Below are positions 5,726 to 59,008 of a stretch of DNA of 64,000 nt, one piece after another. The stretch lies in sequence record MW879340.1, one strand, 5' to 3'. Position numbers and translations under genes: made by a program. Position 1 is the first letter of the stretch. Each line of letters starts with the position of its first letter. Under the pieces are notes generated by a model. It made no database searches, was not told the DNA's origin, and saw only the letters and a program-made list of their open reading frames with translations.

Positions 5726-6376
5726 ATGTTAGAGGCGCTATTAGGAAAACCAAACATCAAGAGTAAGTACTTAGTCGACATTAACTTTGAGGCTGAGTCC
5801 GTTGGCTCCCGACTGATAACTGACAGGGGTACTCTGGGTGTTAATTTAGTACGAAATGTAAGTACCGGTACCCGCACTGATGGCGTTGTTGATGATCCGA
5901 CCTTTGGTAAATGTTACAAGTTTGATGGTGGCACAATCTTTGTCGGCGATAAGAATCCAGCTGTCTGGAATAAACAATATCGAATGGAATTGAAGTTCGT
6001 CAATATCGGCACAAACTCATCTTCCGTAATCTGCTGTGGCGATTACCCTGGGTCAGCTGCGACACATGCCGGTTGGGAATTGTCGCCTAACCAATACCCG
6101 TCTACGTACATGCAGATGTTCATGGTCACACAGCAGAACAGCTACACACGTTTATTGTTACCCGGTACCAATCCAGGCCCAACGGTATTAGAAACCATCA
6201 TTGTTACTCGTGTTGGGTCGACTATTACCATGTCCAACCCACGCACAGGGCAATCGGTTACCTCTACGTTTGATACGGGTAATGATTACCGAATGCATGT
6301 CGGCGGTGTGTACTCTATGAACTACGGCGCAGCGTTCCAGGGTCTGTTGAAATCCTTTACTATCGAGTTAACATAA
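5726..6376 (+). CDS. putative virion accessory protein, LamG/ConA-like domain, MLEALLG N-terminus
   Basis: GAGGTGG RBS; beta-rich pattern (YKFDGG, MHVGG..FQGLLKSF). Confidence 0.65.
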   Translation: MLEALLGKPNIKSKYLVDINFEAESVGSRLITDRGTLGVNLVRNVSTGTRTDGVVDDPTFGKCYKFDGGTIFVGDKNPAVWNKQYRMELKFVNIGTNSSSVICCGDYPGSAATHAGWELSPNQYPSTYMQMFMVTQQNSYTRLLLPGTNPGPTVLETIIVTRVGSTITMSNPRTGQSVTSTFDTGNDYRMHVGGVYSMNYGAAFQGLLKSFTIELT

Positions 6377-6407
6377 AGGGTGGGGCTCTAGCCCCGCTTT
6401 TATGCCG
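6372..6407 (+). terminator. terminator with TTATGCCG tail
   Basis: CATAAAG-GGTGGGGCT..GCCCCGCT-TTTATGCCG. Confidence 0.7.
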
Positions 6408-6454
6408 ACCTAGTATTACTGGACATCTATCGTAAATAAATTGCGTTGTAACAA

Positions 6455-6479
6455 TTTTCACCCCTACATTACTAAGGTG
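6455..6479 (+). promoter_or_regulatory. putative early (virion RNAP) promoter
   Basis: TTTTCA-CCC-CTACATTACTAAGGTG; 4 copies in the window; resembles the phiKZ early TATTAC motif. Confidence 0.7.
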
Positions 6480-6532
6480 AATGCATTCCTGCTCAACCAT
6501 TGAGCTTATCTACACAACGAGGATCCACCCCT

Positions 6533-7231
6533 ATGTATCAGCAGATTAACACCACTCAAATGCCTGTCGTTAAACCGGTTAACGACATCATTATCAATCT
6601 CGTTAACGAAGCTAACGCTTTGATCAAGGAAGTCACCGCGGATTATCAGATCAATTCTGATACTGGTGAAATCGTTGGTAAACGTCTTAAGCCTTCCCTG
6701 GTTGGTGAGCAGCACTACGACCACGGCACCATCGGGTATGTGGCTGCGGGTAATGCGGGTATCGTCACCGCTAACAACTATTTCAAAACCGAGCCGTTTG
6801 CTCAGCGCATCGAAAAGCTGCACTATCTGAGCATCGTCAGCCTGGCTGAAAAGATCGCTAACCTGGAAGATGCGGACAAGCCGGTTACTGAGTACGAACC
6901 TATCGGCGTTGCTTCTACCTTCGATGGTCTGTTCATTGAAGCCCTGGCGGTTGTATTGACCGAACACGGTTTCTATGTTGAGCTGACTTCCACTCCGAAC
7001 TACAACAACCCGAACGGCCCGAAAGAACTGATCGGCGCGTATTCGTTCGAACAATGGTCACGCCCGCTGCCACTGCGCGGCACCCGTGCGGCGTTCGTTG
7101 AGCGCTGGAAACGTGTTCTGAACGGTATCCCTGAGGCGTACTCTCAGGCTTACGGTCTGGCACTGCAACCGGTGAGCAACCAACAACCAGTACAAGAAGT
7201 CGACAATCAGGCCGACGAACAGCAACAGTAA
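6533..7231 (+). CDS. early hypothetical protein, Q-rich C-terminus
   Basis: GAGGA RBS before ATG 6533; first gene after the early promoter. Confidence 0.8.
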   Translation: MYQQINTTQMPVVKPVNDIIINLVNEANALIKEVTADYQINSDTGEIVGKRLKPSLVGEQHYDHGTIGYVAAGNAGIVTANNYFKTEPFAQRIEKLHYLSIVSLAEKIANLEDADKPVTEYEPIGVASTFDGLFIEALAVVLTEHGFYVELTSTPNYNNPNGPKELIGAYSFEQWSRPLPLRGTRAAFVERWKRVLNGIPEAYSQAYGLALQPVSNQQPVQEVDNQADEQQQ

Positions 7232-7250
7232 CTTTTAACAGGGTACGTAC

Positions 7251-7616
7251 ATGAGCGATTATACTCAAGAAATCTACAGAGCGGTTACATGCAAAACGGT
7301 AACCAAGGGCGCCACGATGTTCATTGATGACTTCTGTGATGTCTGGACCATGATTCCGATGCTGAACAGCTTTGGAGAGATGAGTCAATTTCGCCAGTAC
7401 ACTGGTCGCCTTATTGTGACCAGCCGCCCGCTACTCAACGACGCCACGGGCAACTACCTGTATCTGGGTGAGCTCGTGCCGTCGTACCACTTCTCACTGC
7501 GTAACCCGTCGCCGATGATTGCGGGGTTGCAGCATCAGCTCGGTTTTTACATGACCGGGCGTTTGAACAAGGTTCTTAACCGTTACCAAAAGAAACCCGT
7601 ACGTTGTAAAGGATAA
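7251..7616 (+). CDS. hypothetical protein
   Basis: 121-aa ORF in an operon-like array. Confidence 0.75.
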   Translation: MSDYTQEIYRAVTCKTVTKGATMFIDDFCDVWTMIPMLNSFGEMSQFRQYTGRLIVTSRPLLNDATGNYLYLGELVPSYHFSLRNPSPMIAGLQHQLGFYMTGRLNKVLNRYQKKPVRCKG

Positions 7617-7622
7617 CCACCC

Positions 7623-8057
7623 ATGTTGAAAAAGCTCACTGTGCTGGCTGGTCTAATGATCAGCCTTAACGCCTTCTCAGCCGATACCGTGATTAACGGT
7701 AAAGTATGGTCGGTAGAATACAATACCGGCTCAGCGTTCTATTCAGCAATAAAAGGAAAGCAAGAAATCACCATGGAGTGTCTGTTAGGTGACATGACCT
7801 TCGCACTCCATGATGACGAAACCGGTCTGGACTTTAACTCCCGTGATAACCACGTTGGGGTTATTGTCGACGGTGTCATCTACAGCACACCTAAAACGCT
7901 CAAGGAGCGCCGTGCGTTCTATGACACTGTCTTGCATGCTTCTGACAGTATAATGCTTCAGGAAGTCAACAGCGAACGCTCAAAGGCATTCCCGATTAAG
8001 GAACTGCGTCAGCTGTTCCAGTCCATTGAATTCGACCTGTCAGATTGTAAGGAATGA
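7623..8057 (+). CDS. exported protein with signal peptide
   Basis: MLKKLTVLAGLMISLNAFSA-D; AAGGA RBS. Confidence 0.75.
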   Translation: MLKKLTVLAGLMISLNAFSADTVINGKVWSVEYNTGSAFYSAIKGKQEITMECLLGDMTFALHDDETGLDFNSRDNHVGVIVDGVIYSTPKTLKERRAFYDTVLHASDSIMLQEVNSERSKAFPIKELRQLFQSIEFDLSDCKE

Positions 8058-8551
8058 ACATGCGCAATGATCGTGTAATACGAATTGATGACTTGGTTAA
8101 TCGCATGGTTGATCGCAACATGCGACCTAAACTGGTACTCACTGGTTTTTATGCCGACCTGAAGATGTATAATGAATGGGAAAAGAAAAACCAGTTTATT
8201 CCTGTTCAAAGGAATGTGTCTGAAGAATACATGCGCAAACTGCGAGCGTATGGTTATTCGATGTGTGAGGAGCACTTCGAATTATCCTTCACCGATGCAC
8301 TGGGTTCTCAACGTAACATTCGCATCAGTATGTCCTGCGCAATGGATCCCATTTCCAAGAATAGCGGTGATATAGCAATGCCTGAGCAAATAGCCTGTGG
8401 AGTTGAAGATATCGACGGTGGTCACATGTTCGTTGATAACGTACGGGCTATTTTCGACATCACATTAGGTCGCGTGGTCATGGGTAATGGTGACTACATG
8501 CGCTCTAACCTTTCATCGGTTGTTATCCAGGATGACGATAATTTATATTAA
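8054..8551 (+). CDS. hypothetical protein
   Basis: ATGA overlap. Confidence 0.75.
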   Translation: MNMRNDRVIRIDDLVNRMVDRNMRPKLVLTGFYADLKMYNEWEKKNQFIPVQRNVSEEYMRKLRAYGYSMCEEHFELSFTDALGSQRNIRISMSCAMDPISKNSGDIAMPEQIACGVEDIDGGHMFVDNVRAIFDITLGRVVMGNGDYMRSNLSSVVIQDDDNLY

Positions 8552-8568
8552 CCTGTAGGAGCTTTATC

Positions 8569-8889
8569 ATGGAAGCGATCCCTCAAGCACTGATCAGTGA
8601 CGTCTGTCCTGAAGGTGTTCTGGTCTACATTAACAAAGACCATTTCGTTTTAGTCAAAGGTAGTACCAACGGCCGTCCAACAGAAACCGTGCTTGGTGCG
8701 GTATTGCTTTCCACTACGCCTGCTAAAGAAGGCGAGACCAAAGACGCCGTGTCATTCCCGTTGCAGCGTGATCCGAACACTTATCTGTACATCGTCGGTA
8801 ATGAGTTCCCTGACTCACGTTGTTTAGCAATCTGGGATATGATCTTTGATAACCTGGATAAATACTTAGCAATTAAAGGGTACCGCTAA
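8569..8889 (+). CDS. hypothetical protein
   Basis: AGGAG RBS. Confidence 0.8.
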   Translation: MEAIPQALISDVCPEGVLVYINKDHFVLVKGSTNGRPTETVLGAVLLSTTPAKEGETKDAVSFPLQRDPNTYLYIVGNEFPDSRCLAIWDMIFDNLDKYLAIKGYR

Positions 8890-9254
8890 TGCACTTCCAC
8901 ATCAACCGTATAAAAGTTACGGCAAACATCGACGGCTGGGTTAATACCATCGTCATCGAGGACCGCGATGTACTGACGTTACGTGACGTCCACCTCACCC
9001 GCACTGAACATAAAACGATCGACCTTAGCTTTTGTGTCAGTGTCCCAGCGGGTGTGGCTAAAATCGAATTACCGGTAACCCTCAATTGCATGAATGGCAC
9101 ACGGCTTAGCATGGAATTACCGAGCAAGGTGATTGCAATGGTTAACGATAAACGCCATCTGGTCATCCTCAGCAACCCATCTTTTGAACTTATTGATTTG
9201 ACTCCAGCCATAAAGTCAGCAAACATCATTCCAGTGTTTGACGTTGTTGCTTAG
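8889..9254 (+). CDS. hypothetical protein
   Basis: TAATG coupling. Confidence 0.75.
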   Translation: MHFHINRIKVTANIDGWVNTIVIEDRDVLTLRDVHLTRTEHKTIDLSFCVSVPAGVAKIELPVTLNCMNGTRLSMELPSKVIAMVNDKRHLVILSNPSFELIDLTPAIKSANIIPVFDVVA

Positions 9255-9279
9255 CCAGTCAAGTAAATAATAATGATAT

Positions 9280-9312
9280 ACAGCGGGGAAACCACCTCGC
9301 TGTTTTTTTTTT
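9280..9312 (+). terminator. intrinsic terminator
   Basis: ACAGCGGGG-AAACCA-CCTCGCTGT followed by a long T run. Confidence 0.8.
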
Positions 9313-9326
9313 GTTGAGGTGAAGTA

Positions 9327-9737
9327 ATGGCTAAGGTCTATAGCAAGATAGTGGCAATCGCCTGTGACTTTGCTGGTGACTTCTCATTCCCTAAGCTCCG
9401 GGAATGTTTGCCGCCAAATACCCGCATTGTTGCACTGTACAATTTTGCCACCGCCACGCAATTCGCAGAAGACGTTAAGTCAGCGATGAAACGCAGCGAT
9501 GTCATTGTTGTCGATACCAGTGAGCACACATTACGCTTTCTTAAGATGTTGGATATTCCGTATCAGCTTATCTTTGTTGGTAACTATACCACGGATGACG
9601 AATACCGCCACATCAAGAACTGTCGCTTACAGCCGAACTGCATCCACACCGAGCTGGAAAAGCCGAGTGATTTCGATAAGTTAATTTGGCACTACCGTCC
9701 TGATACAGGGCTGTCCGTTGAATACCCATCGGCATAA
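9327..9737 (+). CDS. hypothetical protein, possibly a degenerate P-loop/kinase-like fold
   Basis: GAGGTG RBS; DVIVVD Walker-B-like strand but no intact Walker A. Confidence 0.7.
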   Translation: MAKVYSKIVAIACDFAGDFSFPKLRECLPPNTRIVALYNFATATQFAEDVKSAMKRSDVIVVDTSEHTLRFLKMLDIPYQLIFVGNYTTDDEYRHIKNCRLQPNCIHTELEKPSDFDKLIWHYRPDTGLSVEYPSA

Positions 9738-9788
9738 AAGCATGAGGGCTTCTACTCCTTTGCGGGAGTAGAAGCACCTCTATGCCGA
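9729..9788. terminator. bidirectional terminator, GGCATAAA..TATGCCG family
   Basis: Convergent junction; inner stem GCTTCTACTCC/GGAGTAGAAGC flanked by TCGGCATA/TATGCCGA. Confidence 0.8.
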
Positions 9789-10268
9789 TTATGGTTGTTT
9801 TTTATTTGCTTCGATGAAGGCTTTCTCTAAATCAGATAAGCCATTATCTTTTACTTCGTCACGTTTCTTCCCGTAACGAATAGCCTGCGCTGACAGCATC
9901 TTCTGTTTCGAGTAGGTATACTTCATCCATCTGTCGAAAGGAATCCCCAAGAACTCGAAGATCCGGTTATTGAGGTACTCTTCGATATACCCACCAAACC
10001 CACTGACCAACAAGGCGTCTTCTTGATCCACTTGGCTGACCAGTGAGAACGGCGATAGATCGGCATCGTGATTCACAAACCCATACGTATCGTCGTACAG
10101 CTCCAATAGCCGTAGTGTGGCAACTTCCTTGTCGCCACTGAGGAACTTGGGATCTGTTAATGCTGCTTCCCAAGCCCCACTACGATCACTGTAAGCGCTA
10201 CCGAAATCAGGGTGGATTAGATGTCGGCGCTCGCTATAGAACTGTTCAGCGTATTCGTTAAGAGGGTA
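9789..10268 (-). CDS. -1 frame extension of the upstream 550-aa protein (putative tail-assembly-chaperone GT-like part)
   Basis: Frame open from about 10305 to the stop at 9789; no ATG/GTG/TTG before TTG 10106, which lacks an RBS; entered by the slippery T TTT TTT at 10274-10268. Confidence 0.65.
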   Translation of the reverse strand, partial: YPLNEYAEQFYSERRHLIHPDFGSAYSDRSGAWEAALTDPKFLSGDKEVATLRLLELYDDTYGFVNHDADLSPFSLVSQVDQEDALLVSGFGGYIEEYLNNRIFEFLGIPFDRWMKYTYSKQKMLSAQAIRYGKKRDEVKDNGLSDLEKAFIEANKKQP

Positions 10269-11869
10269 AAAAAAGCTCGTTCCATGTTGACTGGCGTGAA
10301 CACAGGGAACTTCTCACCCACGGCCGGTTGACGCTGACCGCACGCGGTGCACTTGTAACGCGGCAGTGCAACTACACCGACCGTCATGTCGTTGATGAAG
10401 TTACCGACTTCTTTGTAGAAGCTTTCTTTGAAGGCCTCGTCCTTGCTGAGTTCTTTCAGTGCTTCGTACAGATCTTCTTCACCTTCAACGAAGCCGTCCA
10501 CCTGACCAGTAGAATCGAGGTAGTCAATACGACGGACCCAGTGAGCGTAGTTACGCAGTGCCGTAATAGCCGCTTGTTTGTTGATGTACTGAACACGTTG
10601 TTCACGGGTCAGCTCATCTTTAAACGACAGCGTTACGGAGTCTTCGATTGCATCCAGCCATGCATTACCTGCCAGCAGTTTGTTATCGATTGCCGGTACA
10701 CTGAACACAACACGCACACCCGGGGTGATATTCACAACGTTCTCACGAATCGCAGTGAAGTATTCCTGGTATGCCATGACCTGATCCAGCGTATGGCCGG
10801 ACTGGCGACGCATATGCGCTTGTTGTGCTTCAGTCAGACGGGCGTTGTCAATAATGATCATGCGGCCAATGTTGACTTTATGCACGTCGACGTTACCACA
10901 TTTGGCCGGATCAACCTGGCAAGGCTGTGCCAGCATGTAGCCGGAACGGAAACGCGCAGCCATGTAATAGCCAACGATCAGCGGGATGTCCTGGATCTTA
11001 ATGACCGCACCCAGTTCCTTCTTGTTGACTTTACCCATGGACGTACTGACGATCATGTTCGCCAGCATATCCCACAGGTGACGCAGCACGATCACGTCGG
11101 AGTTGGAGAAGACCAGACCCGCAGTACGACGACCCAACACAGACTTAGACGCCAGTACACGAGTATGGAAGTTAACCATCTCGTCTTCACCCGCAACCAA
11201 CAGCGTTAGCCAGATACCAGAATGCGGAATTGGGAAGGTGATGAAGTCACCGATCTGCATTTCCTGACGCGCACGCACCATCGCATCACGACCGGTCAGT
11301 CGCTCACCTTTCTTGTGTTTGCTGTTGTTGATGGTCGGGCGATAACCACCACGGACCTGGTTGTCGATCAGGATACCTTGCAGCCAGCGACTGTTTGTAC
11401 GCTCAACGGTGTCGGTCAACCCGTTCATGTAAGCCATGTGGTTGATAGACTGTTGTGTAGCGTTCAGCCATTCCATGGTTGCCGGCGCACCTTTCAAACG
11501 CACCATCTCACGGAACATTTCAGTTTCCGGAGAATCCGCTTTACCTTCATTAATCCCGTTCACGAGATCGTTGATGGTCATCTGGTCGCCGTGGGCTACG
11601 TGCAGTAATGCAGACAGCTCTTCGTACGGCTCCAGTACGCGGGAGATACGAGGATCGACAAACAGGTCATCGAGTTCGATCTCTGGGATTTCAGGCAGTT
11701 CCAGGCTCGGATCAAAACCTTCTTCCAGATCACCACCAGTTGGATCACTACCCGGACCTGACACGCCCGCATCACCGATTGGTTCTGGTGCAACGGCTAC
11801 GCCAGCAGAAGGTACCGGAATCGCATCAATGTCAATTGATACGTTTTCTTCGTTAGTTGGTTCAGTCAT
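10217..11869 (-). CDS. conserved jumbo-phage protein, putative tail/baseplate assembly chaperone (two Cys pairs)
   Basis: 550 aa; acidic N-terminus; CQVDPAKC and CTACG motifs; function inferred. Confidence 0.7.
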   Translation of the reverse strand: MTEPTNEENVSIDIDAIPVPSAGVAVAPEPIGDAGVSGPGSDPTGGDLEEGFDPSLELPEIPEIELDDLFVDPRISRVLEPYEELSALLHVAHGDQMTINDLVNGINEGKADSPETEMFREMVRLKGAPATMEWLNATQQSINHMAYMNGLTDTVERTNSRWLQGILIDNQVRGGYRPTINNSKHKKGERLTGRDAMVRARQEMQIGDFITFPIPHSGIWLTLLVAGEDEMVNFHTRVLASKSVLGRRTAGLVFSNSDVIVLRHLWDMLANMIVSTSMGKVNKKELGAVIKIQDIPLIVGYYMAARFRSGYMLAQPCQVDPAKCGNVDVHKVNIGRMIIIDNARLTEAQQAHMRRQSGHTLDQVMAYQEYFTAIRENVVNITPGVRVVFSVPAIDNKLLAGNAWLDAIEDSVTLSFKDELTREQRVQYINKQAAITALRNYAHWVRRIDYLDSTGQVDGFVEGEEDLYEALKELSKDEAFKESFYKEVGNFINDMTVGVVALPRYKCTACGQRQPAVGEKFPVFTPVNMERAFFTLLTNTLNSSIASADI

Positions 11870-11871
11870 GC

Positions 11872-12321
11872 TTAATTACCCTTTTGGTCGTTTTGCGCTT
11901 TCAATGCGGCAGCGTGAGCCTGTTCGTTAGAGTTAAACAACGGCACGAAGTAATTGTCCCAGAGCTGCAACATGTTGCTTTGAATAAGGACATATTCTTC
12001 ATGAATCGCCAGGAACTGTGCGATATCACTTGCAGCCATCGCATTACCTTTACGTCCAAGGTGTTTAGGATGAATGGCTGCGAGCTGTTGTTCGGTATTC
12101 TGAATGCAGGTCAGCAACGTTTCGATGCATGGATTCAGAATATTAGGATTCGGATGGAAATGGATAATGTTTGGATTAACCGCGAGCATGCACTGATTAC
12201 GATACTGCTGGAGCAGCTCAATCGTATAGTGTCTAACACCGGTTTCCAGGTATTCCCAGTTGCTCTCGGGCGCTGGTTGTGCCTCTGGTTTTGCCAGTGG
12301 ATAGAGTGGTGTGGTTGACAT
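11872..12321 (-). CDS. hypothetical protein
   Basis: AAGGA RBS; tiles directly into the next minus-strand gene. Confidence 0.75.
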   Translation of the reverse strand: MSTTPLYPLAKPEAQPAPESNWEYLETGVRHYTIELLQQYRNQCMLAVNPNIIHFHPNPNILNPCIETLLTCIQNTEQQLAAIHPKHLGRKGNAMAASDIAQFLAIHEEYVLIQSNMLQLWDNYFVPLFNSNEQAHAAALKAQNDQKGN

Positions 12322-12416
12322 ATTTTGGACGTCCTTAACAAATCAAAAAGAATAGGGCCTTCATATATTGATACGGCAAATGTAACAGAATACCAATTAA
12401 TGAAGAGAGTGCGTGA

Positions 12417-13259
12417 ATGAGCGACTTCAGTGAACTGAATGAATATTTGATGCCGTTGATCAGCGTCGAGCGCCGTGAGCGCATTATCACAGCCTGCCAG
12501 GAGCTGTCCAACGCGGGTTATAATCAGGTCCAGCCTGACGTTGATCGTTTGTTAAACATGTCCAATGATGGCGAAGCAGATTCGGTGATTGATGATCTGC
12601 ACGCCCAGTTGTTCGAACACCTGTACAGCATTACCCTTGACCTTGGTTTCGTGTGGCCGGAAGAAATCAACTGGGTGGAGGACTTCAACCTGCTGTCTGA
12701 CATTCTGCATGGCATAACCTTGCTTGACAATGTCGAAGATTACGGTGAGATCACCCGTGTGTTGAACGATGACCTGATGTCGAATGAAGAGAAGGTGGTT
12801 GACATTCTTTCTTCAACGTTGGCAAAAGACATGCATCTGATCATGGAGCGTGTTCAGGAAGTCATGCCTGAAACCCTCGAAGGCATTGCCACATCCATTG
12901 TCACCCCGTACGCCGAAGAAGACAGTGAACCACCAACCAAAGAACTGGACTACGTCAAAGAACGTCTGGTGCGGTTCGAGGCTAAACTCTACCAAGGTTT
13001 GGCATACACTTACATTGCCTCTGGCGGCGCACTGGGTGTGACCTATGACTCATTGCTGTTGATGTACAACGATCAGCTGGGTGCGTTGATTGATTACGAT
13101 AAAACCATTTTGACGCAGGAGCTGATTGGCTTTGCGCTGGTGAGCGATATCATCGACGACATGCTGCAAGATGAAGTTTGCAAGCAGCTGGATATTTACA
13201 TTGACGATAAACTGACACTGCAACCGTTGGGTGCCATCGTAACAGGATTCTTCGCATGA
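12417..13259 (+). CDS. acidic conserved hypothetical protein
   Basis: 280 aa; ATGA-coupled to the RNAP subunit gene. Confidence 0.8.
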   Translation: MSDFSELNEYLMPLISVERRERIITACQELSNAGYNQVQPDVDRLLNMSNDGEADSVIDDLHAQLFEHLYSITLDLGFVWPEEINWVEDFNLLSDILHGITLLDNVEDYGEITRVLNDDLMSNEEKVVDILSSTLAKDMHLIMERVQEVMPETLEGIATSIVTPYAEEDSEPPTKELDYVKERLVRFEAKLYQGLAYTYIASGGALGVTYDSLLLMYNDQLGALIDYDKTILTQELIGFALVSDIIDDMLQDEVCKQLDIYIDDKLTLQPLGAIVTGFFA

Positions 13260-14566
13260 ATCAGAAAGAGTTCTTATTAGCCTCGATTCGAAATCAGGCC
13301 TATCGACACCGTGCTTGGGTGTTCAGCACCCTGTCAATTACCAGTCATGATTTTGACTGGGACTTCCCGGACCGCTCACAGGGGCTGGCACCGTTCCAGA
13401 TCCTGCGTGGGCCTCAAAACGATCGCGTGTTCTTCTGGAATCCCGATAGTCAGGTGATGGAAGAGCTGACGGGCATTGATCCTAACTTCCCAGCGTTTCG
13501 TCCTGATGACGAGATCACACTGGACAGTAGCGACTGGTCCATCATCAAAGAACCTACGGTAACCAAGTTCGGTCGCATACTGACAAACCTGTACTACTTC
13601 TACGACGTACTGGGTGATCGTGCACCGTTCTTTAATCAGGAATTCAGCAAAGGGATGCTGGAAAGTTTCTTCAAGAAATACTTCCGCAATAAAGACCATC
13701 CCAAGTATAACGACCCTGACACTATCACGTACGATCAGTTCAAGGCCTGCATTAACAACGGTTTCTCCATGGCGCCGTTCAGCCGAGTTTGTGTGGCGAC
13801 GGCTTGTCCTGAAACCATGTATCCGCCACGTTGGTTAGTGGAGATGCGTGACAAGTTGTTCGAAGAGCACAAAGACCAGCTGTCCGATCCACTGGTAATG
13901 GGGCGTATTCAGGAGCAGCTGCTGAAAGCGTACAAAGAGTTCTTGGCTACTACACCTTCAAAGAACTCGTTCATCAAAGCGAAGACCATCAACGACGCCT
14001 TCAACAAAATGTTTGTGTCCGGTGGTATTTCAACGAACTTTGGTGTGTCAACCGTTGTAACCCGTTCCTTGTACGAAGGCTGGGATCTTAAACAACTACC
14101 TGCGCTGGCTAACTCCTCCATCGAAGCGTCCTTCGGTCGTGGTGCGTCTACAGCGGATGGCGGTGAAAAGGTTAAGATGCTGATTCGTGCCACACAGAAC
14201 ATCATGATCACGCAGGATGATTGTGGTGCAACCCTGGGTATTCCATGGACGGTTGACCAGCATGTGATTAAGAGCCAGGTGGATGCGTACGGCATTATCA
14301 ACGGCAAGACCGTGCTGTTGACCCCTGAGATCCTTCAGGCCAACTTAGGGAAAGCGATGTTGATTCGTTCCCCTGATTTCTGTAAGAAGTCTCATGGCGA
14401 CACCTGTCGTTACTGTGCTGGCGCACACAACGCCACTAACGATCGTGGTACGTCATCTGGTGCTTCAGCAATCGGTTCTAAGATCATGCTACTTTCCATG
14501 AAGGCAATGCACAAAGGTTCTAAGATCGATCTGGTTGAATTGGATCTTGATGAGATCTTCTTCTAA
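13256..14566 (+). CDS. rpoC: RNA polymerase beta'-like subunit (C-terminal part, split phage RNAP, probably the virion RNAP)
   Basis: ITQDDCG...LIRSPDFC-x6-C-x2-C matches the second beta' zinc site (E. coli ITEDDCG...RSVVSC..VCAHC); GRGASTADGG resembles the trigger-helix region. Confidence 0.85.
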   Translation: MNQKEFLLASIRNQAYRHRAWVFSTLSITSHDFDWDFPDRSQGLAPFQILRGPQNDRVFFWNPDSQVMEELTGIDPNFPAFRPDDEITLDSSDWSIIKEPTVTKFGRILTNLYYFYDVLGDRAPFFNQEFSKGMLESFFKKYFRNKDHPKYNDPDTITYDQFKACINNGFSMAPFSRVCVATACPETMYPPRWLVEMRDKLFEEHKDQLSDPLVMGRIQEQLLKAYKEFLATTPSKNSFIKAKTINDAFNKMFVSGGISTNFGVSTVVTRSLYEGWDLKQLPALANSSIEASFGRGASTADGGEKVKMLIRATQNIMITQDDCGATLGIPWTVDQHVIKSQVDAYGIINGKTVLLTPEILQANLGKAMLIRSPDFCKKSHGDTCRYCAGAHNATNDRGTSSGASAIGSKIMLLSMKAMHKGSKIDLVELDLDEIFF

Positions 14567-14575
14567 GGGGTCATA

Positions 14576-15217
14576 ATGCTTGAATCGATATTAGGGGGAA
14601 AACACACGCCCTGGGTTCCGCCGTCTATGGATGCGAACACGTTATTCAGATTGGTAGATTTTAAAGCCACTACCGATATCGTGGATCGAGGACCTAGTGG
14701 GATAGTGGTGGCGCGCAATGGTGCGCCTGATGTTGGGACGGATGATATCTATTCGTACATTCAATTCACAGCCGGTAAGTATTTAACATTCACGTCGTCG
14801 TTATTAAACCGCACTAATATTGAGTTGACGTGGGTGGTTGGAGAGATAACGAAGTTAACCACGCCATACTCTGGGCCGTTGTTGGACACACGACCTATGG
14901 GAACTAATGGTAATTATCACATCCTTACTATTAACCAGCATCAGGCCGCACCGTTTACAATGAATTATAATTACCCTTCCAGCAGCACAGCAGGGTTAAA
15001 TACTTCAATTAAACCAAACGATGGTCCGTATGTTATTAAACTTCAACTCCGATCGACTGGCACTCGTATTCTGGTTAACGATGCGGTGTTCTATGGCACC
15101 ACTCAGACATCATCACTGGATACGACATATATGAAAATCGGACGTAGTGCGTTCTATAATCCGGTGCCTGATCTACAGTTACGGCTGTACTTCTTTGAGA
15201 TCAAAGCCCTAACTTAA
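14576..15217 (+). CDS. putative virion accessory protein, ConA-like domain, MLESILGG N-terminus
   Basis: AAGGGG RBS; beta-rich; AT-richer codons than its neighbours by eye. Confidence 0.65.
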   Translation: MLESILGGKHTPWVPPSMDANTLFRLVDFKATTDIVDRGPSGIVVARNGAPDVGTDDIYSYIQFTAGKYLTFTSSLLNRTNIELTWVVGEITKLTTPYSGPLLDTRPMGTNGNYHILTINQHQAAPFTMNYNYPSSSTAGLNTSIKPNDGPYVIKLQLRSTGTRILVNDAVFYGTTQTSSLDTTYMKIGRSAFYNPVPDLQLRLYFFEIKALT

Positions 15218-15240
15218 TTCATTCCTACATTACTAAGGTG
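15216..15240 (+). promoter_or_regulatory. putative early promoter
   Basis: AATTCA-TTC-CTACATTACTAAGGTG; the 17-mer 15224-15240 is identical to 6463-6479. Confidence 0.7.
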
Positions 15241-15282
15241 GTCATCCAAACGGGTGGCTGCTTTAGTAATCCTTTTATGCCG
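15229..15282 (+). terminator. 19-bp hairpin terminator with TTTTATGCCG tail, overlapping the early promoter
   Basis: 15229-15247 pairs with 15252-15270 (5 GU pairs), AAAC loop. Confidence 0.7.
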
Positions 15283-15296
15283 ATCAGGAGATTAAC

Positions 15297-15665
15297 ATGT
15301 CAGACAAAAACGTAATAGAAGTTGTGTTCGATACTCGTAGTCCGGATTTTAGTAGTGGTGCTCAGCACGCTTCATTGATTAATCAGGTGGACGAATTGCT
15401 ACGTTCCGGTAAATTGTACAACAAACTCGAGATCACACAATGGGCGGCGTACGATAACGGTGAACTGGTAACAAGCGATGAGAATGTCCATGTTCCTATT
15501 TATCGTCATTTTTACCACGACCAGAAACATAATAAATTTGGTGGTGGGTTCATGCTGTTTGAGTTGTTAGAAGATCTGAGACGTTATTACGATTTCGCTG
15601 ATTTCCTCCCAGGGATGTCAGAGAACTTTGAAATGACTTACACCATCACCGTTACAGTGGCATAA
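15297..15665 (+). CDS. early hypothetical protein
   Basis: AGGAG RBS. Confidence 0.8.
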   Translation: MSDKNVIEVVFDTRSPDFSSGAQHASLINQVDELLRSGKLYNKLEITQWAAYDNGELVTSDENVHVPIYRHFYHDQKHNKFGGGFMLFELLEDLRRYYDFADFLPGMSENFEMTYTITVTVA

Positions 15666-15765
15666 CCTCAGTCATCCAGCGATAGGTACCTGGCATTAGT
15701 TAAGTTGGACATAAAGAACCTATCTTACTGATAGTAGACCTATGTCCGAATTAAAGGAGTGTTGT

Positions 15766-18221: not shown

Positions 18222-18232
18222 CGATCTTATGT
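18222..18232 (+). promoter_or_regulatory. putative late promoter CGATCTTATGT
   Basis: One of 3 identical copies. Confidence 0.5.
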
Positions 18233-18254
18233 GTTTTACACACTTGGAGCTATC

Positions 18255-21800: not shown

Positions 21801-21864
21801 GTCATAAAGGAGCTCTTGTTCCCTTCGGGGAACAAGGCTCTCTTTTTATGCCGCTCTTTTTTTT
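21801..21864. terminator. bidirectional terminator, TTATGCCG family
   Basis: CTTGTTCCC-TTCG-GGGAACAAG; convergent junction. Confidence 0.8.
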
Positions 21865-22713
21865 TTACCTGGGGGTAACGTCTCGTGTATTGGTGTTGGG
21901 GAATAGACGACCCTCACCCCAAATGATCCTGATCACACCCCGACCACCACCTCCCGCTCCGTACTTGGTATCGACGTAGCCATTGGAATCATCGGCACGT
22001 GAGCCTTGACGACCATATGCAGAATATATGCTGCTAGACGCCGCACCAGGAACACCCATTCCATATGGTAACGTACCGCCACCGGCTCGCCCTACTTTAT
22101 CAGCACCACCACTGCTACCGCTTCCGTTATTACCAACGGCACCGTTGGTGTAGTCAGCTCTACCTGCCGGCGCGGTGGCATTGTATCCAGCTGCCGCCCC
22201 TGCACCGCCCGCGCCACTGCCAGCCACACCAGAAGCACCCGCACCACCAATGCCGCCGCCGTCGTTTATTTCATCAGCGCTCTTACCGCCTAGACCACCC
22301 GTGCCACCAGGGCCACTTGAACCAGTAGAGCGACCGCCTTGCCCGCCTTTAGCAATACATAGGTAGCTGTCTTCGCGTAGAAGATATGTGTCACCACCTG
22401 CGCCAGCGATACTGCTTGCTGACGATACATTGCTCCCAGCCGCACCGACCACTAATGTCAACGTTTCACCCGGTGTAACACGGATGTTATTGCGCCAGGA
22501 TAACCCTCCACCACCGCCTCCTCCGCCATACCAGTATAGGCCACTGCCGTTTGAACCGCCGAACGTAGCCATACCACCACCTCCCGCGATAACAACAGCA
22601 CAGATTGATGTTACCCCGTCAGGCACGACCCATTCACTGGTGCCCAACGTATCGACCATAACTTGACCTTTACGCGATACAGGGCCTCCGCCCGCTAGTA
22701 TAAATTCAAACAT
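21865..22713 (-). CDS. glycine-rich putative virion accessory protein, MFEFILAGG N-terminus
   Basis: CAT at 22711-22713 and TTA at 21865-21867 show it is on the minus strand (track label says +); W.VP.GVTSI..V.IAGGGG Gly-rich domain pattern. Confidence 0.75.
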   Translation of the reverse strand: MFEFILAGGGPVSRKGQVMVDTLGTSEWVVPDGVTSICAVVIAGGGGMATFGGSNGSGLYWYGGGGGGGGLSWRNNIRVTPGETLTLVVGAAGSNVSSASSIAGAGGDTYLLREDSYLCIAKGGQGGRSTGSSGPGGTGGLGGKSADEINDGGGIGGAGASGVAGSGAGGAGAAAGYNATAPAGRADYTNGAVGNNGSGSSGGADKVGRAGGGTLPYGMGVPGAASSSIYSAYGRQGSRADDSNGYVDTKYGAGGGGRGVIRIIWGEGRLFPNTNTRDVTPR

Positions 22714-22769
22714 AAATTATCCTTAGGATATTTTCCCCGCCTGTGCGGGCCTTGGTAACATAGCATCGG

Positions 22770-22820
22770 TCGGCATAAAGCCCTCTGGCTCCTCCACCGA
22801 AGTAGAGAAGACCAGAGGTG
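22770..22820 (-). terminator. terminator of the DNA polymerase gene with TTTATGCCG tail, followed by a GATGCTATGT late-promoter-like site (22758-22767)
   Basis: Minus strand CCTCTGG..TTCG..CCAGAGG-GCTTTATGCCG. Confidence 0.65.
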
Positions 22821-44813: not shown

Positions 44814-44975
44814 ATGTTAGAATTAGTTGCACTTGTCGGCACCAGCGTCGACGACCCATCCAGGAAGACCAAAGTATCCGGTGTTCTTATTCATCGCTTA
44901 TTGAAACGTAAAGGCAGTATCCAGACACGTGTTGCCAGCGTACTTGTTCAACGTTTAGTTAAAGTTAATCCGTGA
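44814..44975 (+). CDS. 53-aa protein absent from the ORF track (MLELVALVG...), with an internal duplication
   Basis: GAGG RBS, ATG 44814, TGA 44973-44975 overlapping the next gene's RBS. Confidence 0.7.
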   Translation: MLELVALVGTSVDDPSRKTKVSGVLIHRLLKRKGSIQTRVASVLVQRLVKVNP

Positions 44976-50252: not shown

Positions 50253-50774
50253 TTAGGAGCCTTCGACGACTAAGTAGCGGCCGTCTTCGGTCATCAATGC
50301 AAAATCGTTTTCAGTCATAATGGCGCCAGCCGGGAGACCGATAATAGCTACGGTGACCTGACCCTGATATGCGCGAGAGTTATTCGTGACGATGGTGTAG
50401 ATAATGTTACCGTCCTGATCAACATCGTCTGGGTTAATCGGGTTGTTAAGAACTTCACTCGCATCGATGCCGAGACCGTAACGTTCGTTGAACGCTGCGA
50501 CGACATCAGAAACATCTTGCAAGCTAGGTACAGTGAGGATTACCTTGAAGCGGAACAGTGCGTCCAGATCAAGGCGGTTGAAATTGCCTAATACGCTGCC
50601 TACGTACCCGCCACCAGGTTTCGCCAAGATAGGAAGATTGGTATCTCCGTTAACTGGGTTAAGCACCTGATCAGGTCTGCCGAATCGTACTTGCGCCATG
50701 GTTAACGAGACATTATTGTCTTTGTTTAACTGGGCAAGAATGATCTGGTCCGAAGGCTGTTTCAGGATGGTCAT
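50253..50774 (-). CDS. putative virion structural protein (fibre-associated)
   Basis: GDTNL.I.A....YVGSV...FNRLDL pattern recalled from jumbo-phage virion proteins; upstream of the fibre gene. Confidence 0.65.
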   Translation of the reverse strand: MTILKQPSDQIILAQLNKDNNVSLTMAQVRFGRPDQVLNPVNGDTNLPILAKPGGGYVGSVLGNFNRLDLDALFRFKVILTVPSLQDVSDVVAAFNERYGLGIDASEVLNNPINPDDVDQDGNIIYTIVTNNSRAYQGQVTVAIIGLPAGAIMTENDFALMTEDGRYLVVEGS

Positions 50775-53707: not shown

Positions 53708-53716
53708 GGAATTAAC

Positions 53717-55683: not shown

Positions 55684-55687
55684 GCTG

Positions 55688-55724: not shown

Positions 55725-55741
55725 TATTCGCAATGCAGATG

Positions 55742-55760
55742 ATTTCACATCTACATTACT
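55742..55760 (+). promoter_or_regulatory. putative early promoter
   Basis: ATTTCA-CAT-CTACATTACT. Confidence 0.7.
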
Positions 55761-55791
55761 CTGGTGATAATGATGACAAATGGAAACTAAC

Positions 55792-57029: not shown

Positions 57030-57349
57030 CGTTAATGGCTGAACCAAGTGAAACGATTCTCTCTGAGCTGTACGGCTGGGGTGAAGTTCCGTTTGACTGG
57101 ATCGCCGAACGAGGCGCTGATTTTAATAAAGCACTGCTGGGCAACGGTGAGAATCCTTACTGCATGACCAGCGTGTATAAAGGGAAGGAAGAGTGTAGCT
57201 ACAGCCACATCTTCATGTTCCCTGCCGAACCGTCCAGTCAGCAACTGGATATCAATAAGCAGCAACGGGCGCTGATGGAAAATCTGTGCCGCGGTAAGTT
57301 CCGCATTCATCACATCCATGCCGGTGTGGAATGCTTTGCTTTTATGTAA
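57020..57349 (+). CDS. hypothetical protein
   Basis: 109-aa ORF; start may be ATG 57035. Confidence 0.7.
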   Translation: MELTLMAEPSETILSELYGWGEVPFDWIAERGADFNKALLGNGENPYCMTSVYKGKEECSYSHIFMFPAEPSSQQLDINKQQRALMENLCRGKFRIHHIHAGVECFAFM

Positions 57350-57382
57350 GTCAACAAACCTTTAACCTGTGAGATTGTAAAA

Positions 57383-57793
57383 ATGAAATTAGGCTATTAT
57401 TACGGATTAGTGATGGACAACAAATCCAATGCATACCGCCTCCTGAAAATCCAGCGTACCTCCGCTGGTGAATCTTCAGTGGCAGCCTACACTCGTTGGA
57501 TCAAAGAGTTGGAACAAAAAGAAAAGGGACGTTACACCACGATGGGCCTGTCTTTCGGTGCGCTGAAGATTGAGTACAATCCTAAAGCACTGTCGGGCGT
57601 AGTAAAAGTTGGGTTTGCCGAGCTTGGTATGATCACAGCTAAACCGTCTATCCTGTCCACCGCATTCAAAGGTGTAGCAGGACAGACATTATACCTGTCA
57701 GGTAAACCTAATCCTTTACACAGCAACACGACTCTGAACGAGATTCGTGATGCAATCCTTGAACACATCGAAGACGCTATCTGGGTGGGCTGA
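57383..57793 (+). CDS. hypothetical protein
   Basis: 136-aa ORF, tiling. Confidence 0.75.
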   Translation: MKLGYYYGLVMDNKSNAYRLLKIQRTSAGESSVAAYTRWIKELEQKEKGRYTTMGLSFGALKIEYNPKALSGVVKVGFAELGMITAKPSILSTAFKGVAGQTLYLSGKPNPLHSNTTLNEIRDAILEHIEDAIWVG

Positions 57794-57795
57794 TC

Positions 57796-58245
57796 ATGTA
57801 CCAACTGTATACTGAAGAACGTAAGTTTGAACAACTCGCTCAGTACTACACTGAAAATCCTCGTGACATCGTGAAAGGCAATGATGAGTTTAACAAATTC
57901 ATTGCCCGCATTCTTGCTACGCGGGAGATCATTACGCTAGCAGCGAGCACAGGACAGGTGTACGTGCGTAATAAACAAATGCTGTACATTCACATGGCTG
58001 TGACCAAGATCGGCGCTGAGATGGTCGCTGAGATCTTCCAGCAGGCACAGCAGCAGATATACAAGGATTACATTCTTGGCGATCAGCCACTGAGTGTGTC
58101 GTTGAAACCAACTGCGTTACAAATGCGCTTTAACTTTTATAACCATGAAGACCTGTGGTTCCAAGCCTTGACATTGCAATGTCATGGTTTAGTTAATACG
58201 CGATCGCAGGCTTATGTTATCGATTGTTTGAACGCAGTGCGCTAA
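57796..58245 (+). CDS. hypothetical protein
   Basis: 149-aa ORF, followed by a terminator. Confidence 0.75.
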   Translation: MYQLYTEERKFEQLAQYYTENPRDIVKGNDEFNKFIARILATREIITLAASTGQVYVRNKQMLYIHMAVTKIGAEMVAEIFQQAQQQIYKDYILGDQPLSVSLKPTALQMRFNFYNHEDLWFQALTLQCHGLVNTRSQAYVIDCLNAVR

Positions 58246-58247
58246 AC

Positions 58248-58314
58248 GTCATAACGCAGTTACCTACCCCGCAAAGGGTAGGTAACTGCAATTATGCCGA
58301 TACTCTTTTTTTTT
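58248..58314. terminator. bidirectional terminator, TTATGCCG family, GCAA loop
   Basis: GCAGTTACCTACCC..GGGTAGGTAACTGC; convergent junction. Confidence 0.85.
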
Positions 58315-58315
58315 G

Positions 58316-59008
58316 TTACTGAACCAATTCCAGGATAGGGCGCCAGCCCACGTTTGAGTTTGCTGTGGTACGACCCAATGACGAAGGAGAGATTACAGAT
58401 TCATACCCAATACACATGGCGTTAGCCTGAGAAGTATTAAGCTGCTGCACCATCGAGTGTTTACCCGGGATGCCCAAGTTAAGAGATGCCCACTTCGTGC
58501 CATCCTCAGAGTTTACCGTGGTGTTCTTATCCACAGACCACAGCATCCTTCCCCACTCTGACGCCTGTACTTCACCTGCCGAGTTCTGCCAGAATGTGTT
58601 CAATGAGATACTCGGTAACCGCACCAGGAACACCGACCCTTGAATGTTGATCGTCCTGTACTGGTTTACCCCAGGCATTATGGTCTGCCCACCGTTACCA
58701 TCCACCCCATATATCAATCCCTTGTTGTACATGGTGCTCCATGGAGTGCCGTCATTCAGGGTGACCAATGGCCAATACAAGATCCTGCCATCTAACTCGA
58801 ACTTAGTCCAGTTAGGGTTGTTGCCGTTAGACGTAATACCAAATGCACCACACAGCGCAGCGCCTGTGATAAACTGGGATGGCGTTAACTGTCCATAATA
58901 CTTGGTTGACTTCTTACCGTCGCTACTCGTGTAGCTGTTGGTTGGTGTGCCAGGTCCAGGACCTAGACCAGGGGTCGAAGACTTGCCACCAAATATAGAT
59001 TCAAGCAT
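58316..59008 (-). CDS. putative virion accessory protein, MLESIFGG N-terminus (GPGP..YYG...FITG..L..AFG jumbo-phage family)
   Basis: GGAGAG RBS before ATG 59008; the track's upstream ATG 59035 lies in the promoter motif. Confidence 0.75.
   Translation of the reverse strand: MLESIFGGKSSTPGLGPGPGTPTNSYTSSDGKKSTKYYGQLTPSQFITGAALCGAFGITSNGNNPNWTKFELDGRILYWPLVTLNDGTPWSTMYNKGLIYGVDGNGGQTIMPGVNQYRTINIQGSVFLVRLPSISLNTFWQNSAGEVQASEWGRMLWSVDKNTTVNSEDGTKWASLNLGIPGKHSMVQQLNTSQANAMCIGYESVISPSSLGRTTANSNVGWRPILELVQ

What the first reader, a model, noticed from the sequence alone, without database searches (positions are those of the whole stretch)
5726..59008. Shared N-terminal peptide on scattered, unrelated cargo domains: a possible plug-in virion display system
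Seen: genes far apart begin MLEALLGK (5726 +), MLESILGGK (14576 +), MFEFILAGG (22713 -), MLESIFGGK (59008 -) and, more loosely, MLELVALVG (44814 +). After about 9 residues they diverge into two different ConA/LamG-like domains, a Gly-rich domain, a GPGP..YYG domain and a 53-aa peptide. 14576 and 59008 share ATGCTTGAATCnATATTnGGnGGnAA, differing only at third codon positions. The four long genes are each directly followed by a terminator and interrupt core synteny (e.g. after the RNAP, DNA polymerase and helicase genes). 5726 and 59008 have the same CGATCTTATGT site upstream, and 22713 has GATGCTATGT. By eye they use more TTA/ATA codons than core genes. Inference: the peptide is a minimal docking or packaging tag that lets late-expressed, swappable binding domains attach to one virion site, so new adhesins can be gained by a short fusion.
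Basis: partly seen in the sequence, partly recalled or inferred. Interest (0 to 1): 0.75.

Follow-up and report, generated by a model that had tools for sequence, protein, structure and literature searches.

The report
Shared N-terminal tag on phage adhesins
Thirteen small, sugar-binding-type proteins of an Erwinia jumbo phage, built on five unrelated folds, all start with the same eight-residue peptide. It most likely plugs interchangeable adhesin domains into the virus particle, a short-peptide docking principle known from other phages but not described in this form.

Summary
The window is the last 64 kb of Erwinia phage pEa_SNUABM_48 (294 kb, every gene annotated 'hypothetical'). The peptide M-[L/F/I]-E-x-h-h-(G/A)-G-K opens four genes in the window and nine more elsewhere in the genome, against 0.03 expected by chance. 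It never occurs inside a protein next to a Met.

The cargoes belong to five unrelated binding folds: ConA/Laminin_G_3, Gly_rich_2, a chimallivirus 'virion structural protein' fold, Kelch and discoidin. AlphaFold models put the tag outside the fold (pLDDT about 50, against 90-93 overall).

In other phages the same cargo families carry other N-terminal anchors:
- MLPFPRLxEYGN in Rak2-like CBB, where mass spectrometry found the proteins in virions.
- An FN3 domain.
- A 154-residue N-terminal region that includes the paralog family B N-domain, in SPN3US, where the family is head-associated.
- An Mtd_N tail-fibre domain.

One genomic slot, after RNAP beta, is empty, holds a ConA-like cargo or holds a different tagged cargo in close relatives. 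Most tag genes are separate units with a phiKZ-type late-promoter-like site (GATnnTATGT) and a terminator.

Best reading: a minimal docking peptide for swappable adhesins. Virion attachment and the socket are inferred, not shown. This is a new variant of the known 'conserved docking peptide' principle.

The parts
5695..5704 (+). late-promoter-like site GATCTTATGT, 22 nt before the start of the 5726 gene
   Evidence: kept as GATTCTATGT in the 83 %-identical orthologue L022 while the flanks diverge; phiKZ late promoters are defined by T(-3)ATG(+1) (PMC7598289)
5726..6376 (+). gp298: tag MLEALLGK plus ConA-like cargo (phrog_6011 'virion structural protein')
   Evidence: M-L-E invariant in 7 orthologues of 68-100 % identity
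6378..6407 (+). hairpin plus TTATGCCG terminator-like element after gp298
14576..15217 (+). gp311: tag MLESILGGK plus ConA-like jelly roll; starts 9 nt after the RNAP beta gene and has no promoter-like site of its own
   Evidence: AF2 pLDDT 90.3 with residues 1-10 at 51; Foldseek finds lectin/CBM-type jelly rolls
15229..15282 (+). 19-bp hairpin plus TTATGCC after gp311; the same element directly follows RNAP beta in relative L022 and follows the different tagged gene in SA002
21865..22713 (-). gp323: tag MFEFILAGG plus Gly_rich_2 cargo (PF21722, phrog_4474), downstream of the DNA polymerase gene
22758..22778 (-). TTATGCCG (end of the DNA polymerase terminator) followed by late-promoter-like GATGCTATGT
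21814..21837 (.). hairpin shared by the convergent genes gp322 and gp323
58316..59008 (-). gp355: tag MLESIFGGK, GPGP linker and 'YYG' domain (phrog_1062/3589), downstream of the DnaB helicase gene
   Evidence: AF2 pLDDT 93.0 with residues 1-10 at 50; BFVD matches are chimallivirus virion structural proteins
59032..59048 (-). TTATGCCG overlapping late-promoter-like GATCTTATGT; the in-frame ATG at 59035 lies inside this site
58262..58299 (.). hairpin plus TTATGCCG between the convergent genes gp354 and gp355
44814..44975 (+). 53-aa ORF starting MLELVALVG: doubtful member, no cargo, orphan
50253..50774 (-). gp344: homologue of the N-domain of SPN3US paralog family B; weak candidate partner for the tag (Rosetta-stone lead only)
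18223..18232 (+). a further copy of GATCTTATGT, before an untagged 108-aa gene (18255-18581)

Best explanation
The eight to ten N-terminal residues (M-L-E, one variable residue, two hydrophobic residues, then G/S-G and K/R) are a self-contained anchor peptide. The peptide is joined by a flexible Gly/Pro-rich linker to a single ligand-binding domain.

Thirteen such genes are made late in infection, mostly from their own small promoter-to-terminator units. Their products are proposed to attach non-covalently, through the peptide, to a socket on the assembled particle (head surface, neck or tail appendages; which one is unknown). They would add a changeable set of lectin-like adhesins for host surface glycans.

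Because the anchor is so short, a new binding domain becomes usable by gaining the peptide, and cargoes can be exchanged at fixed genomic slots.

Shown: the modular architecture, selection on the peptide at protein level, its position outside the folded domain, the alternative anchors on the same cargo families, slot turnover, late-type regulatory signals, and the virion location of homologous cargoes in other phages.

Inferred: virion attachment in this phage, the docking role of the peptide, the socket, and glycan binding.
For: - 13 tagged genes against 0.03 expected, all at true N-termini.
- The first three codons vary synonymously between members (CTT/CTA/TTA, GAA/GAG), so selection acts on the protein.
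- M-L-E is invariant in orthologue sets of 37-83 % identity, while residues 4-13 vary.
- Cargoes: Laminin_G_3/ConA-like, Gly_rich_2, YYG fold, Kelch, F5/8C discoidin. There is no cross-class similarity.
- AF2 gives confident domains, with residues 1-10 at pLDDT about 50.
- The same gp311 cargo family carries either the MLE-type tag or an MLPFPRLxQYGN-type tag.
- In CBB the second tag sits on Kelch, Laminin_G_3 and gp311-like proteins. CBB_536, 537, 548, 549 and 551 were found in virions by MS; the Kelch one, CBB_550, was not among the proteins detected (PMC5259590).
- The YYG cargo occurs with the tag (33 of 96), with an FN3 start, with Mtd_N, or fused to the SPN3US family-B N-domain. The alignment to SPN3US begins at residue 13, just after the tag.
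- Family B is head-associated in SPN3US (PMC5105663, PMC5694885).
- The slot after RNAP beta is empty in L022, ConA-like in this phage and AH06, and a tagged YYG gene in SA002. The slot beside the DNA polymerase holds Gly-rich cargo here and two other tagged genes in SA002.
- GAT-n-n-TAT-G/A-T has 12 genome hits; 5 lie within 60 nt upstream of tag genes (0.016 expected). One more heads the gp104-111 cluster that holds two tag genes.
- Published precedent: docking peptides as short as 7 residues on secondary receptor-binding proteins (PMC6872550).
Against: - There is no virion proteome for this phage or its twin pEa_SNUABM_37. The 'virion structural protein' labels on tagged homologues are annotation by similarity.
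- No socket was identified and no complex prediction could be run.
- The same tag type occurs in chimallivirus-like jumbo phages and in Vequintavirinae, whose structural proteins are otherwise unrelated. The socket would therefore have to be shared or mobile, or the peptide does something more generic.
- The only partner lead, the family-B N-domain, was found only in jumbo phages.
- gp311 has no promoter-like site of its own.
- GG is not strictly conserved (MLEALLGK, MLEMLMRD, MLETLLVV).
- SPN3US authors consider some family-B members possible internal 'ejection' proteins.
Confidence: 0.55

Rival explanations
1. The peptide is a capsid-targeting signal of the T4 CTS kind. It would bind the scaffold or core and carry the proteins into the prohead interior, so that they are internal or ejected head proteins rather than displayed adhesins.
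For: SPN3US homologues of the YYG cargo (paralog family B) were found in tailless particles, and some abundant members are listed as 'Head ejection?'. T4 internal proteins use a short N-terminal CTS (PMC5694885).
Against: - The cargoes are lectin, propeller, discoidin and Gly-rich fibre-tip type domains. Elsewhere these sit in tail fibres, baseplate wedges and minor tail proteins.
- SPN3US prohead-protease sites all read A-x-E (AQE, ATE, ASE, AVE, ALE). No such site follows the tag in the four window proteins.
- The YYG cargo is also found behind an Mtd_N tail-fibre domain.
Confidence: 0.12
2. The peptide serves a function other than virion attachment. Examples are recognition by an assembly chaperone, control of stability or proteolysis, weak membrane association, or an effect on translation initiation. 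The proteins would then act as free lectins in the infected cell or after lysis.
For: - The tag is shared by phage families with unrelated virion proteins.
- The first six residues are mostly hydrophobic and are followed by basic residues.
- There is no direct virion evidence for MLE-tagged proteins.
Against: - Synonymous variation argues against an RNA-level signal.
- A different tag sits on the same cargoes in CBB, where the proteins are in purified virions.
- The tag occupies the position taken by structural anchor domains (FN3, family-B N-domain, Mtd_N) in homologues.
- The promoter-like sites are of the late, structural-gene type.
Confidence: 0.2
3. There is no module. The shared start reflects chance, or full-length paralogy diverged beyond recognition.
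For: Four members (gp106, gp109, gp132, gp355) are true paralogues, and the two ConA-like window genes are probably remote homologues.
Against: - 0.03 hits are expected against 9-13 observed.
- Kelch propeller, discoidin, ConA jelly roll, Gly-rich and YYG folds cannot be homologous.
- The same cargo families carry other N-termini elsewhere.
Confidence: 0.02

Closest known systems
Conserved N-terminal docking peptides of secondary receptor-binding proteins (Klebsiella KP32/KP34/K11 groups, Menlow and PhiK64-1 groups; K1E/K1-5/SP6 with 7- or 11-residue peptides) (PMC6872550; PMC13352976)
   Same: A very short N-terminal peptide is conserved within a phage group and differs between groups. It sits on otherwise unrelated, exchangeable host-recognition proteins and is thought to dock them onto another virion protein.
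   Different: The known cases are large trimeric tailspikes or depolymerases, clustered in the tail-fibre locus and docking on a T4gp10-like branching domain of a primary RBP. Here the cargoes are small single lectin-like domains (about 170-380 aa). There are up to 13 per genome, scattered as separate late units, with no identified branching protein, and the tag crosses phage families.
phiKZ fibre paralogues gp131-135 (PMC13250141)
   Same: A jumbo-phage paralogue set with a shared N-terminal attachment segment and different C-terminal (propeller) domains, anchored side by side on the baseplate.
   Different: The shared part there is a whole N-terminal domain plus a helix that forms a six-helix bundle. 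The proteins are large and homologous along that region. Here only 8-10 residues are shared.
SPN3US paralog family B (gp138-154 and others) (PMC5105663, PMC5694885)
   Same: The YYG cargo and its FN3-type companions are homologous to family B members. The cassette [anchor-YYG][FN3-YYG][FN3-YYG] is conserved.
   Different: In SPN3US the YYG domain is covalently fused to a 154-residue N-terminal region that includes the family-B N-domain. Here the tag takes the place of that region, and the N-domain is encoded by separate genes.
T4 capsid targeting sequence on internal proteins (as described in PMC5694885)
   Same: A short N-terminal peptide is shared by unrelated proteins and directs them to one place in the particle.
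   Different: The CTS is removed by the prohead protease and its cargo is internal. No protease-type site follows the tag here, and the cargoes are adhesin-like.
Rak2-like phage CBB structural proteins CBB_536/537/548/549/551 plus Kelch CBB_550, which was not detected in virions (PMC5259590)
   Same: The same cargo families (Laminin_G_3, Kelch, gp311-like) appear as small proteins with a shared N-terminal peptide, and five of the six were proven in virions by MS. The phage bears unexplained tail 'whiskers'.
   Different: The peptide is a different one (MLPFPRLxEY[GA]N). The shared start was not remarked on in the passages of that paper that I read.

Membership tests
Docking-peptide ('conserved peptide') secondary RBPs of branched RBP systems | Short N-terminal peptide conserved among otherwise unrelated host-recognition proteins of one phage | tested here: met
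   13 genes, 5 cargo folds
Docking-peptide ('conserved peptide') secondary RBPs of branched RBP systems | The peptide differs between phage groups while the cargo families are shared | tested here: met
   MLE-type against MLPFPRL-type on the same family. However, the MLE type is shared by jumbo phages and Vequintavirinae.
Docking-peptide ('conserved peptide') secondary RBPs of branched RBP systems | A primary RBP with an anchor and a T4gp10-like branching domain that receives the peptide | not tested
   The proteome was not screened for T4gp10-like domains, and no partner was identified.
Docking-peptide ('conserved peptide') secondary RBPs of branched RBP systems | Cargo is a trimeric tailspike or depolymerase | tested here: not met
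   The cargoes are single ConA-like, Kelch, discoidin, Gly-rich or YYG domains.
T4-type capsid targeting sequence | The N-terminal peptide ends at a prohead-protease site and is removed | tested here: not met
   No A-x-E type site (the SPN3US sites) follows the tag in the four window proteins. Cleavage itself cannot be tested here.
T4-type capsid targeting sequence | Cargo located inside the head | not testable with these tools
   The only evidence is that SPN3US family B is head- or neck-associated.
SPN3US paralog family B | Sequence homology to gp138-154 | tested here: met
   This holds for the YYG cargo only: tblastn E 2e-28 (gp132) and 9e-12 (gp355). It does not hold for the ConA-like, Gly-rich, Kelch or discoidin members.
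SPN3US paralog family B | Family-B N-domain at the N-terminus | tested here: not met
   Alignments start at residue 13 of the tagged proteins. The N-domain is encoded separately by gp9-12 and gp344.
phiKZ-type late genes (nvRNAP promoters) | TATG at the transcription start | tested here: inconclusive
   GATnnTATGT lies 22-54 nt upstream of 5 tag genes and is conserved in an orthologue. Transcription starts were not measured, and the phiKZ consensus comes from PMC7598289.

The most novel reading that the evidence does not exclude
The MLE-type peptide is a cross-family 'universal plug'. One small, conserved or itself mobile socket, present on virions of chimallivirus-like jumbo phages and of Vequintavirinae, accepts any protein that starts with the peptide. 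Single-gene adhesin cassettes could then move between unrelated large myoviruses of Enterobacterales and work at once. Rak2-like phages would run a parallel system with their own plug (MLPFPRL...).
Probability: 0.25. Interest if true: 0.8.

Novelty: new variant of a known kind. Interest (0 to 1): 0.62.

Why it matters
If the peptide is a docking tag, large myoviruses have a very cheap way to diversify what their particles stick to. That would explain three things: the many small orphan 'virion structural proteins' with lectin folds scattered through jumbo-phage genomes, the unassigned hairs and whiskers seen on some of these virions, and how such genes are exchanged between phages.

It also gives annotators a simple rule: an N-terminal tag plus a binding domain marks an accessory virion adhesin. 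That rule would name about 4 % of the genes of a genome that is now annotated entirely as 'hypothetical'.

Tried and rejected
- Sequence search of the four window proteins against PDB chains found nothing significant.
- Foldseek of the YYG model against PDB found no significant match. The best hit has E 0.004 and TM 0.24 and is FGE/C-type-lectin-like, so it is only a hint.
- Word-indexed protein searches with single sequences returned only close relatives. A profile search and the exhaustive search were needed to reach further.
- The Agricanvirus mass-spectrometry paper used crude lysates and does not resolve the tagged proteins.
- Six of the seven full-text searches bore on the tag, and none turned up a description of it (and the papers read).
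- A double-glycine leader reading was considered and dropped: GG is not conserved and the peptide is far too short.
- A prohead-protease propeptide reading was dropped because no A-x-E site is present.
- The family-B N-domain as a universal socket is weakened by its absence from Vequintavirinae at tblastn sensitivity.
- The 53-aa ORF at 44814 and the 63-aa gp23 could not be assigned to the set.

Slip to report: while reasoning I recalled from memory a short T4 capsid-targeting peptide and a generic bacteriocin-leader consensus. The T4 comparison in this report rests only on the description in PMC5694885.

The pieces of the phage genome were scanned separately and never joined.


Full report
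**Identity of the window**

Window bases 5000-16000, used as the query, match Erwinia phage pEa_SNUABM_48 (MW879340.1, 294,405 bp) at 100 %, and its twin pEa_SNUABM_37 equally. That match places the 64-kb window at record positions 230406-294405, and the record's annotated gene coordinates there agree with the window's ORFs. All 358 features are annotated 'hypothetical protein'. The nearest named relative is Salmonella phage SA002. Split RNAP subunits, a DnaB helicase and a DNA polymerase place it among phiKZ-like, chimallivirus-type jumbo phages. I read the rest of the genome as five separate loci (L003-L007) and scanned them piece by piece, without joining them.

**The observation**

For the gene at 59008 an in-frame ATG lies 27 nt upstream, but it is part of the promoter-like site. 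A Shine-Dalgarno-like GGAGAG precedes 59008, and the GenBank annotators also chose 59008. The 5' ends of 14576 and 59008 differ only at third codon positions.

**Extent and significance**

A loose pattern run over all six frames of the whole genome hit only at the first start codon of an ORF, 59008 excepted (see above), and never at an internal Met. Inspection of all N-termini beginning M-[LFIMV]-[ED] brought the set to 13 genes, by genome start:
- gp106 (82341)
- gp109 (85149)
- gp112 (88031)
- gp114 (89312)
- gp118 (93853-)
- gp132 (104447-)
- gp164 (126723)
- gp177 (148585)
- gp208 (175985-)
- gp298 (window 5726)
- gp311 (window 14576)
- gp323 (window 22713)
- gp355 (window 59008)

The core motif occurs 8 times in 90,475 internal positions. 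That gives 0.03 expected among about 360 N-termini. Even counted as five independent families, P is about 1e-10. 'LE' is the commonest dipeptide after Met in this proteome. gp23 (63 aa), gp340 (window 44814, 53 aa, orphan), gp40 and gp134 are doubtful.

**The cargoes**

Beyond residue 12 there is no similarity between classes. The classes are:
- ConA-like / Laminin_G_3: gp118 and gp208 (Pfam); gp298 (phrog_6011 'virion structural protein'); gp311 (AF2 model).
- Gly_rich_2: gp114, gp164, gp323.
- Kelch propeller: gp177.
- F5/8C discoidin, just below the Pfam cut-off: gp112.
- The 'YYG' domain of phrog_1062/3589: gp106, gp109, gp132, gp355.

The gp298 and gp311 families are probably remote homologues (hhalign E 4e-4 over 85 columns).

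In other phages the same domains lie inside baseplate-wedge, tail-fibre, minor-tail and giant virion proteins.

The AF2 model of gp311 (26-sequence alignment) has pLDDT 90.3 and is a jelly roll. Foldseek matches lectin or carbohydrate-binding-module type jelly rolls at TM about 0.6 and about 10 % identity, which is fold-level similarity only. The gp355 model (56 sequences) has pLDDT 93.0. It has no significant PDB match, and its BFVD matches are 'virion structural proteins' of PhiEaH1, RSL2, PhiPA3, 201phi2-1, Phabio and Noxifer.

In both models residues 1-10 have pLDDT about 50, so the tag is a free extension and not a strand of the fold.

**The tag is selected as a peptide**

Codons for L2 and E3 vary among members (CTT, CTA, TTA; GAA, GAG). 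In the orthologue sets of gp298 (68-83 % identity) and gp355 (37-63 %), M-L-E is invariant while the following ten residues are among the most variable.

Column shares over 49 distinct tagged database proteins are:
- Position 2: L 0.76.
- Position 3: E 0.96.
- Position 5: L/M 0.90.
- Position 6: L 0.67.
- Positions 7-8: mainly G/S.
- Positions 9-10: mainly K/R.

Positions 2, 3 and 5 were part of the selection pattern.

**Modularity across phages**

This is the main new evidence.

(a) The gp311 family, searched exhaustively, has 28 members with E <= 0.001, most of them about 210-220 aa. Most start with the MLE-type tag, and about seven start MLPFPRLxQYGN-like.

(b) In the Rak2-like phage CBB the second peptide opens a Kelch protein, Laminin_G_3 proteins and two gp311-like proteins. 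CBB_536, 537, 548, 549 and 551 were detected in virions by mass spectrometry; the Kelch protein CBB_550 was not among those detected. CBB carries unexplained tail whiskers (PMC5259590). The related phAPEC6 has unassigned fibres on capsid hexamers and on three tail rings (PMC7247149).

(c) Of 96 short homologues of the YYG cargo, 33 have the tag and about 35 start with an FN3-like segment. A few start with an Mtd_N-type tail-fibre domain (PF18454), and the rest vary.

(d) In this phage the FN3-start genes gp107/108/110/111/129/130/131 share the YYG domain with the tagged genes. They form cassettes [tag-YYG][FN3-YYG][FN3-YYG], as in PhiEaH1.

(e) In SPN3US the first gene of the cassette instead has a 154-residue N-terminal region ahead of the YYG domain, the first part of which (residues 8-113) is the N-domain. 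The alignment to gp132 and gp106 begins at their residue 13, immediately after the tag. This cluster is SPN3US paralog family B, found in tailless particles and therefore head- or neck-associated (PMC5105663, PMC5694885). My mapping of the fetched cluster to gp138-154 rests on position and protein sizes.

(f) MLE-type tags on two or more cargo classes also occur in PCH45, PhiEaH1, Agricanvirus, SA002, RSL2-like phages, Pseudomonas phage D6 and the Vequintavirinae (PBES02, EspYZU08).

**Slot turnover**

Directly after RNAP beta, this phage has gp311 (ConA-like). Agricanvirus AH06 has a 36 %-identical homologue at the same place. SA002 has a tagged YYG-class gene (MGA_284). A 287-kb metagenomic relative (L022) has nothing there. 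In the three close relatives (this phage, SA002 and L022) the same conserved element follows: an early-promoter-like CCTACATTAC, a hairpin and TTATGCC.

Beside the DNA polymerase gene, this phage has the Gly-rich gp323, and SA002 has two other tagged genes (MGA_293 and MGA_294). The gp298 slot is empty in SA002.

Codon usage of the 13 genes deviates modestly but significantly from the rest of the genome. This fits more recent acquisition or lower expression.

**Regulation**

The pattern GA[TA]-n-[ATC]-TAT-[GA]-T has only 12 hits in the genome. Seven are intergenic. Five of those lie 22-54 nt upstream of tag genes (gp109, gp177, gp298, gp323, gp355). One heads the gp104-111 cluster, and one precedes the untagged gene at window 18255. 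The expected number within the 60 nt upstream of the 13 genes is 0.016. The site is kept (GATTCTATGT) in the L022 orthologue while its flanks diverge.

phiKZ late promoters are defined only by T(-3)ATG(+1), read by the non-virion RNAP (PMC7598289). Late expression is therefore likely but was not measured. gp311 has no such site and is probably co-transcribed with RNAP beta.

The terminators are the phage's own 'hairpin+TTATGCCG' element.

**Interpretation**

A short anchor peptide on exchangeable adhesin domains is the reading that fits all of this. Its closest precedent is the 'conserved peptide' of secondary receptor-binding proteins. That peptide can be as short as seven residues and differs between phage groups (PMC6872550). 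A second precedent is the shared N-terminal segments of the phiKZ fibre paralogues gp131-135 (PMC13250141).

What is missing is any direct evidence that the MLE-tagged proteins of this phage are in the particle, and any socket.

A Rosetta-stone lead exists. The N-domain that is fused to the YYG cargo in SPN3US is encoded separately here, by gp9-12 and by window 50253-50774. Homologues of gp9 occur in Agricanvirus and PCH45, which also use the tag, but were not found in Vequintavirinae. The lead therefore cannot be the whole answer.

That the same tag serves phage families with unrelated virions is the main unexplained point, and it keeps the rival readings alive.

I found no description of this tag in the literature I could search. 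That search covers open-access papers only.

**Verdict**

The finding is a new variant of a known kind.

One slip is reported under 'tried and rejected'.

Noticed in passing
window 6400, 8149, 9737(-), 15275, 18591(-), 21846, 22778(-), 46043(-), 46085, 55717, 58292, 59048(-), 63913; 57 copies genome-wide: The octamer TTATGCCG follows GC-rich hairpins throughout the genome: 57 copies against 8.8 expected, 46 of them behind a strong hairpin. It is also present in SA002 and L022. It looks like a phage-specific terminator or RNA-processing signal with a conserved tail in place of a plain U-run.
   Followed up: partly
window 6463, 15224, 45650, 63951; 16 copies genome-wide: The motif C[CT]TA[CT]ATTA[CA] often lies just after those hairpins. 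It resembles the AT-rich early (virion RNAP) promoter consensus described for phiKZ-like phages.
   Followed up: no
L004:31758-38940 and L005:2610-6447 (genome 80758-87940 and 100610-104447): Repeated three-gene cassettes [tag-YYG][FN3-YYG][FN3-YYG] are conserved in PhiEaH1. In SPN3US they are conserved with an N-domain in place of the tag (paralog family B). The three products may form one hetero-oligomer in which only the first subunit carries the anchor.
   Followed up: partly
window 50253-50774 (-) and L003:12675-16141: Stand-alone homologues of the SPN3US family-B N-domain, which is fused to the YYG cargo in SPN3US. This is a Rosetta-stone hint that they could receive the tag. The family is confined to jumbo phages.
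   Followed up: partly
window 18223-18581: An untagged 108-aa gene with no family match carries the same GATCTTATGT site as the tag genes.
   Followed up: no
L006:1585-2535 (genome 148585): The Kelch gene gp177 is annotated as starting 12 nt downstream, which cuts off the tag. The longer start restores MLEIMLGG and matches the SA002 homologue from residue 1.
   Followed up: yes
L004:32496-33254 (gp105): Collagen-like G-x-y repeats in a 252-aa protein at the head of the tag-rich cluster.
   Followed up: no
L016 (CBB 344368-352396): Five CBB proteins (four of them MS-confirmed structural proteins) of three cargo types all start MLPF(P/T/A)R(L/M/I)..Y(G/A)N. I saw no mention of this in the passages of the CBB paper that I read.
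   Followed up: partly
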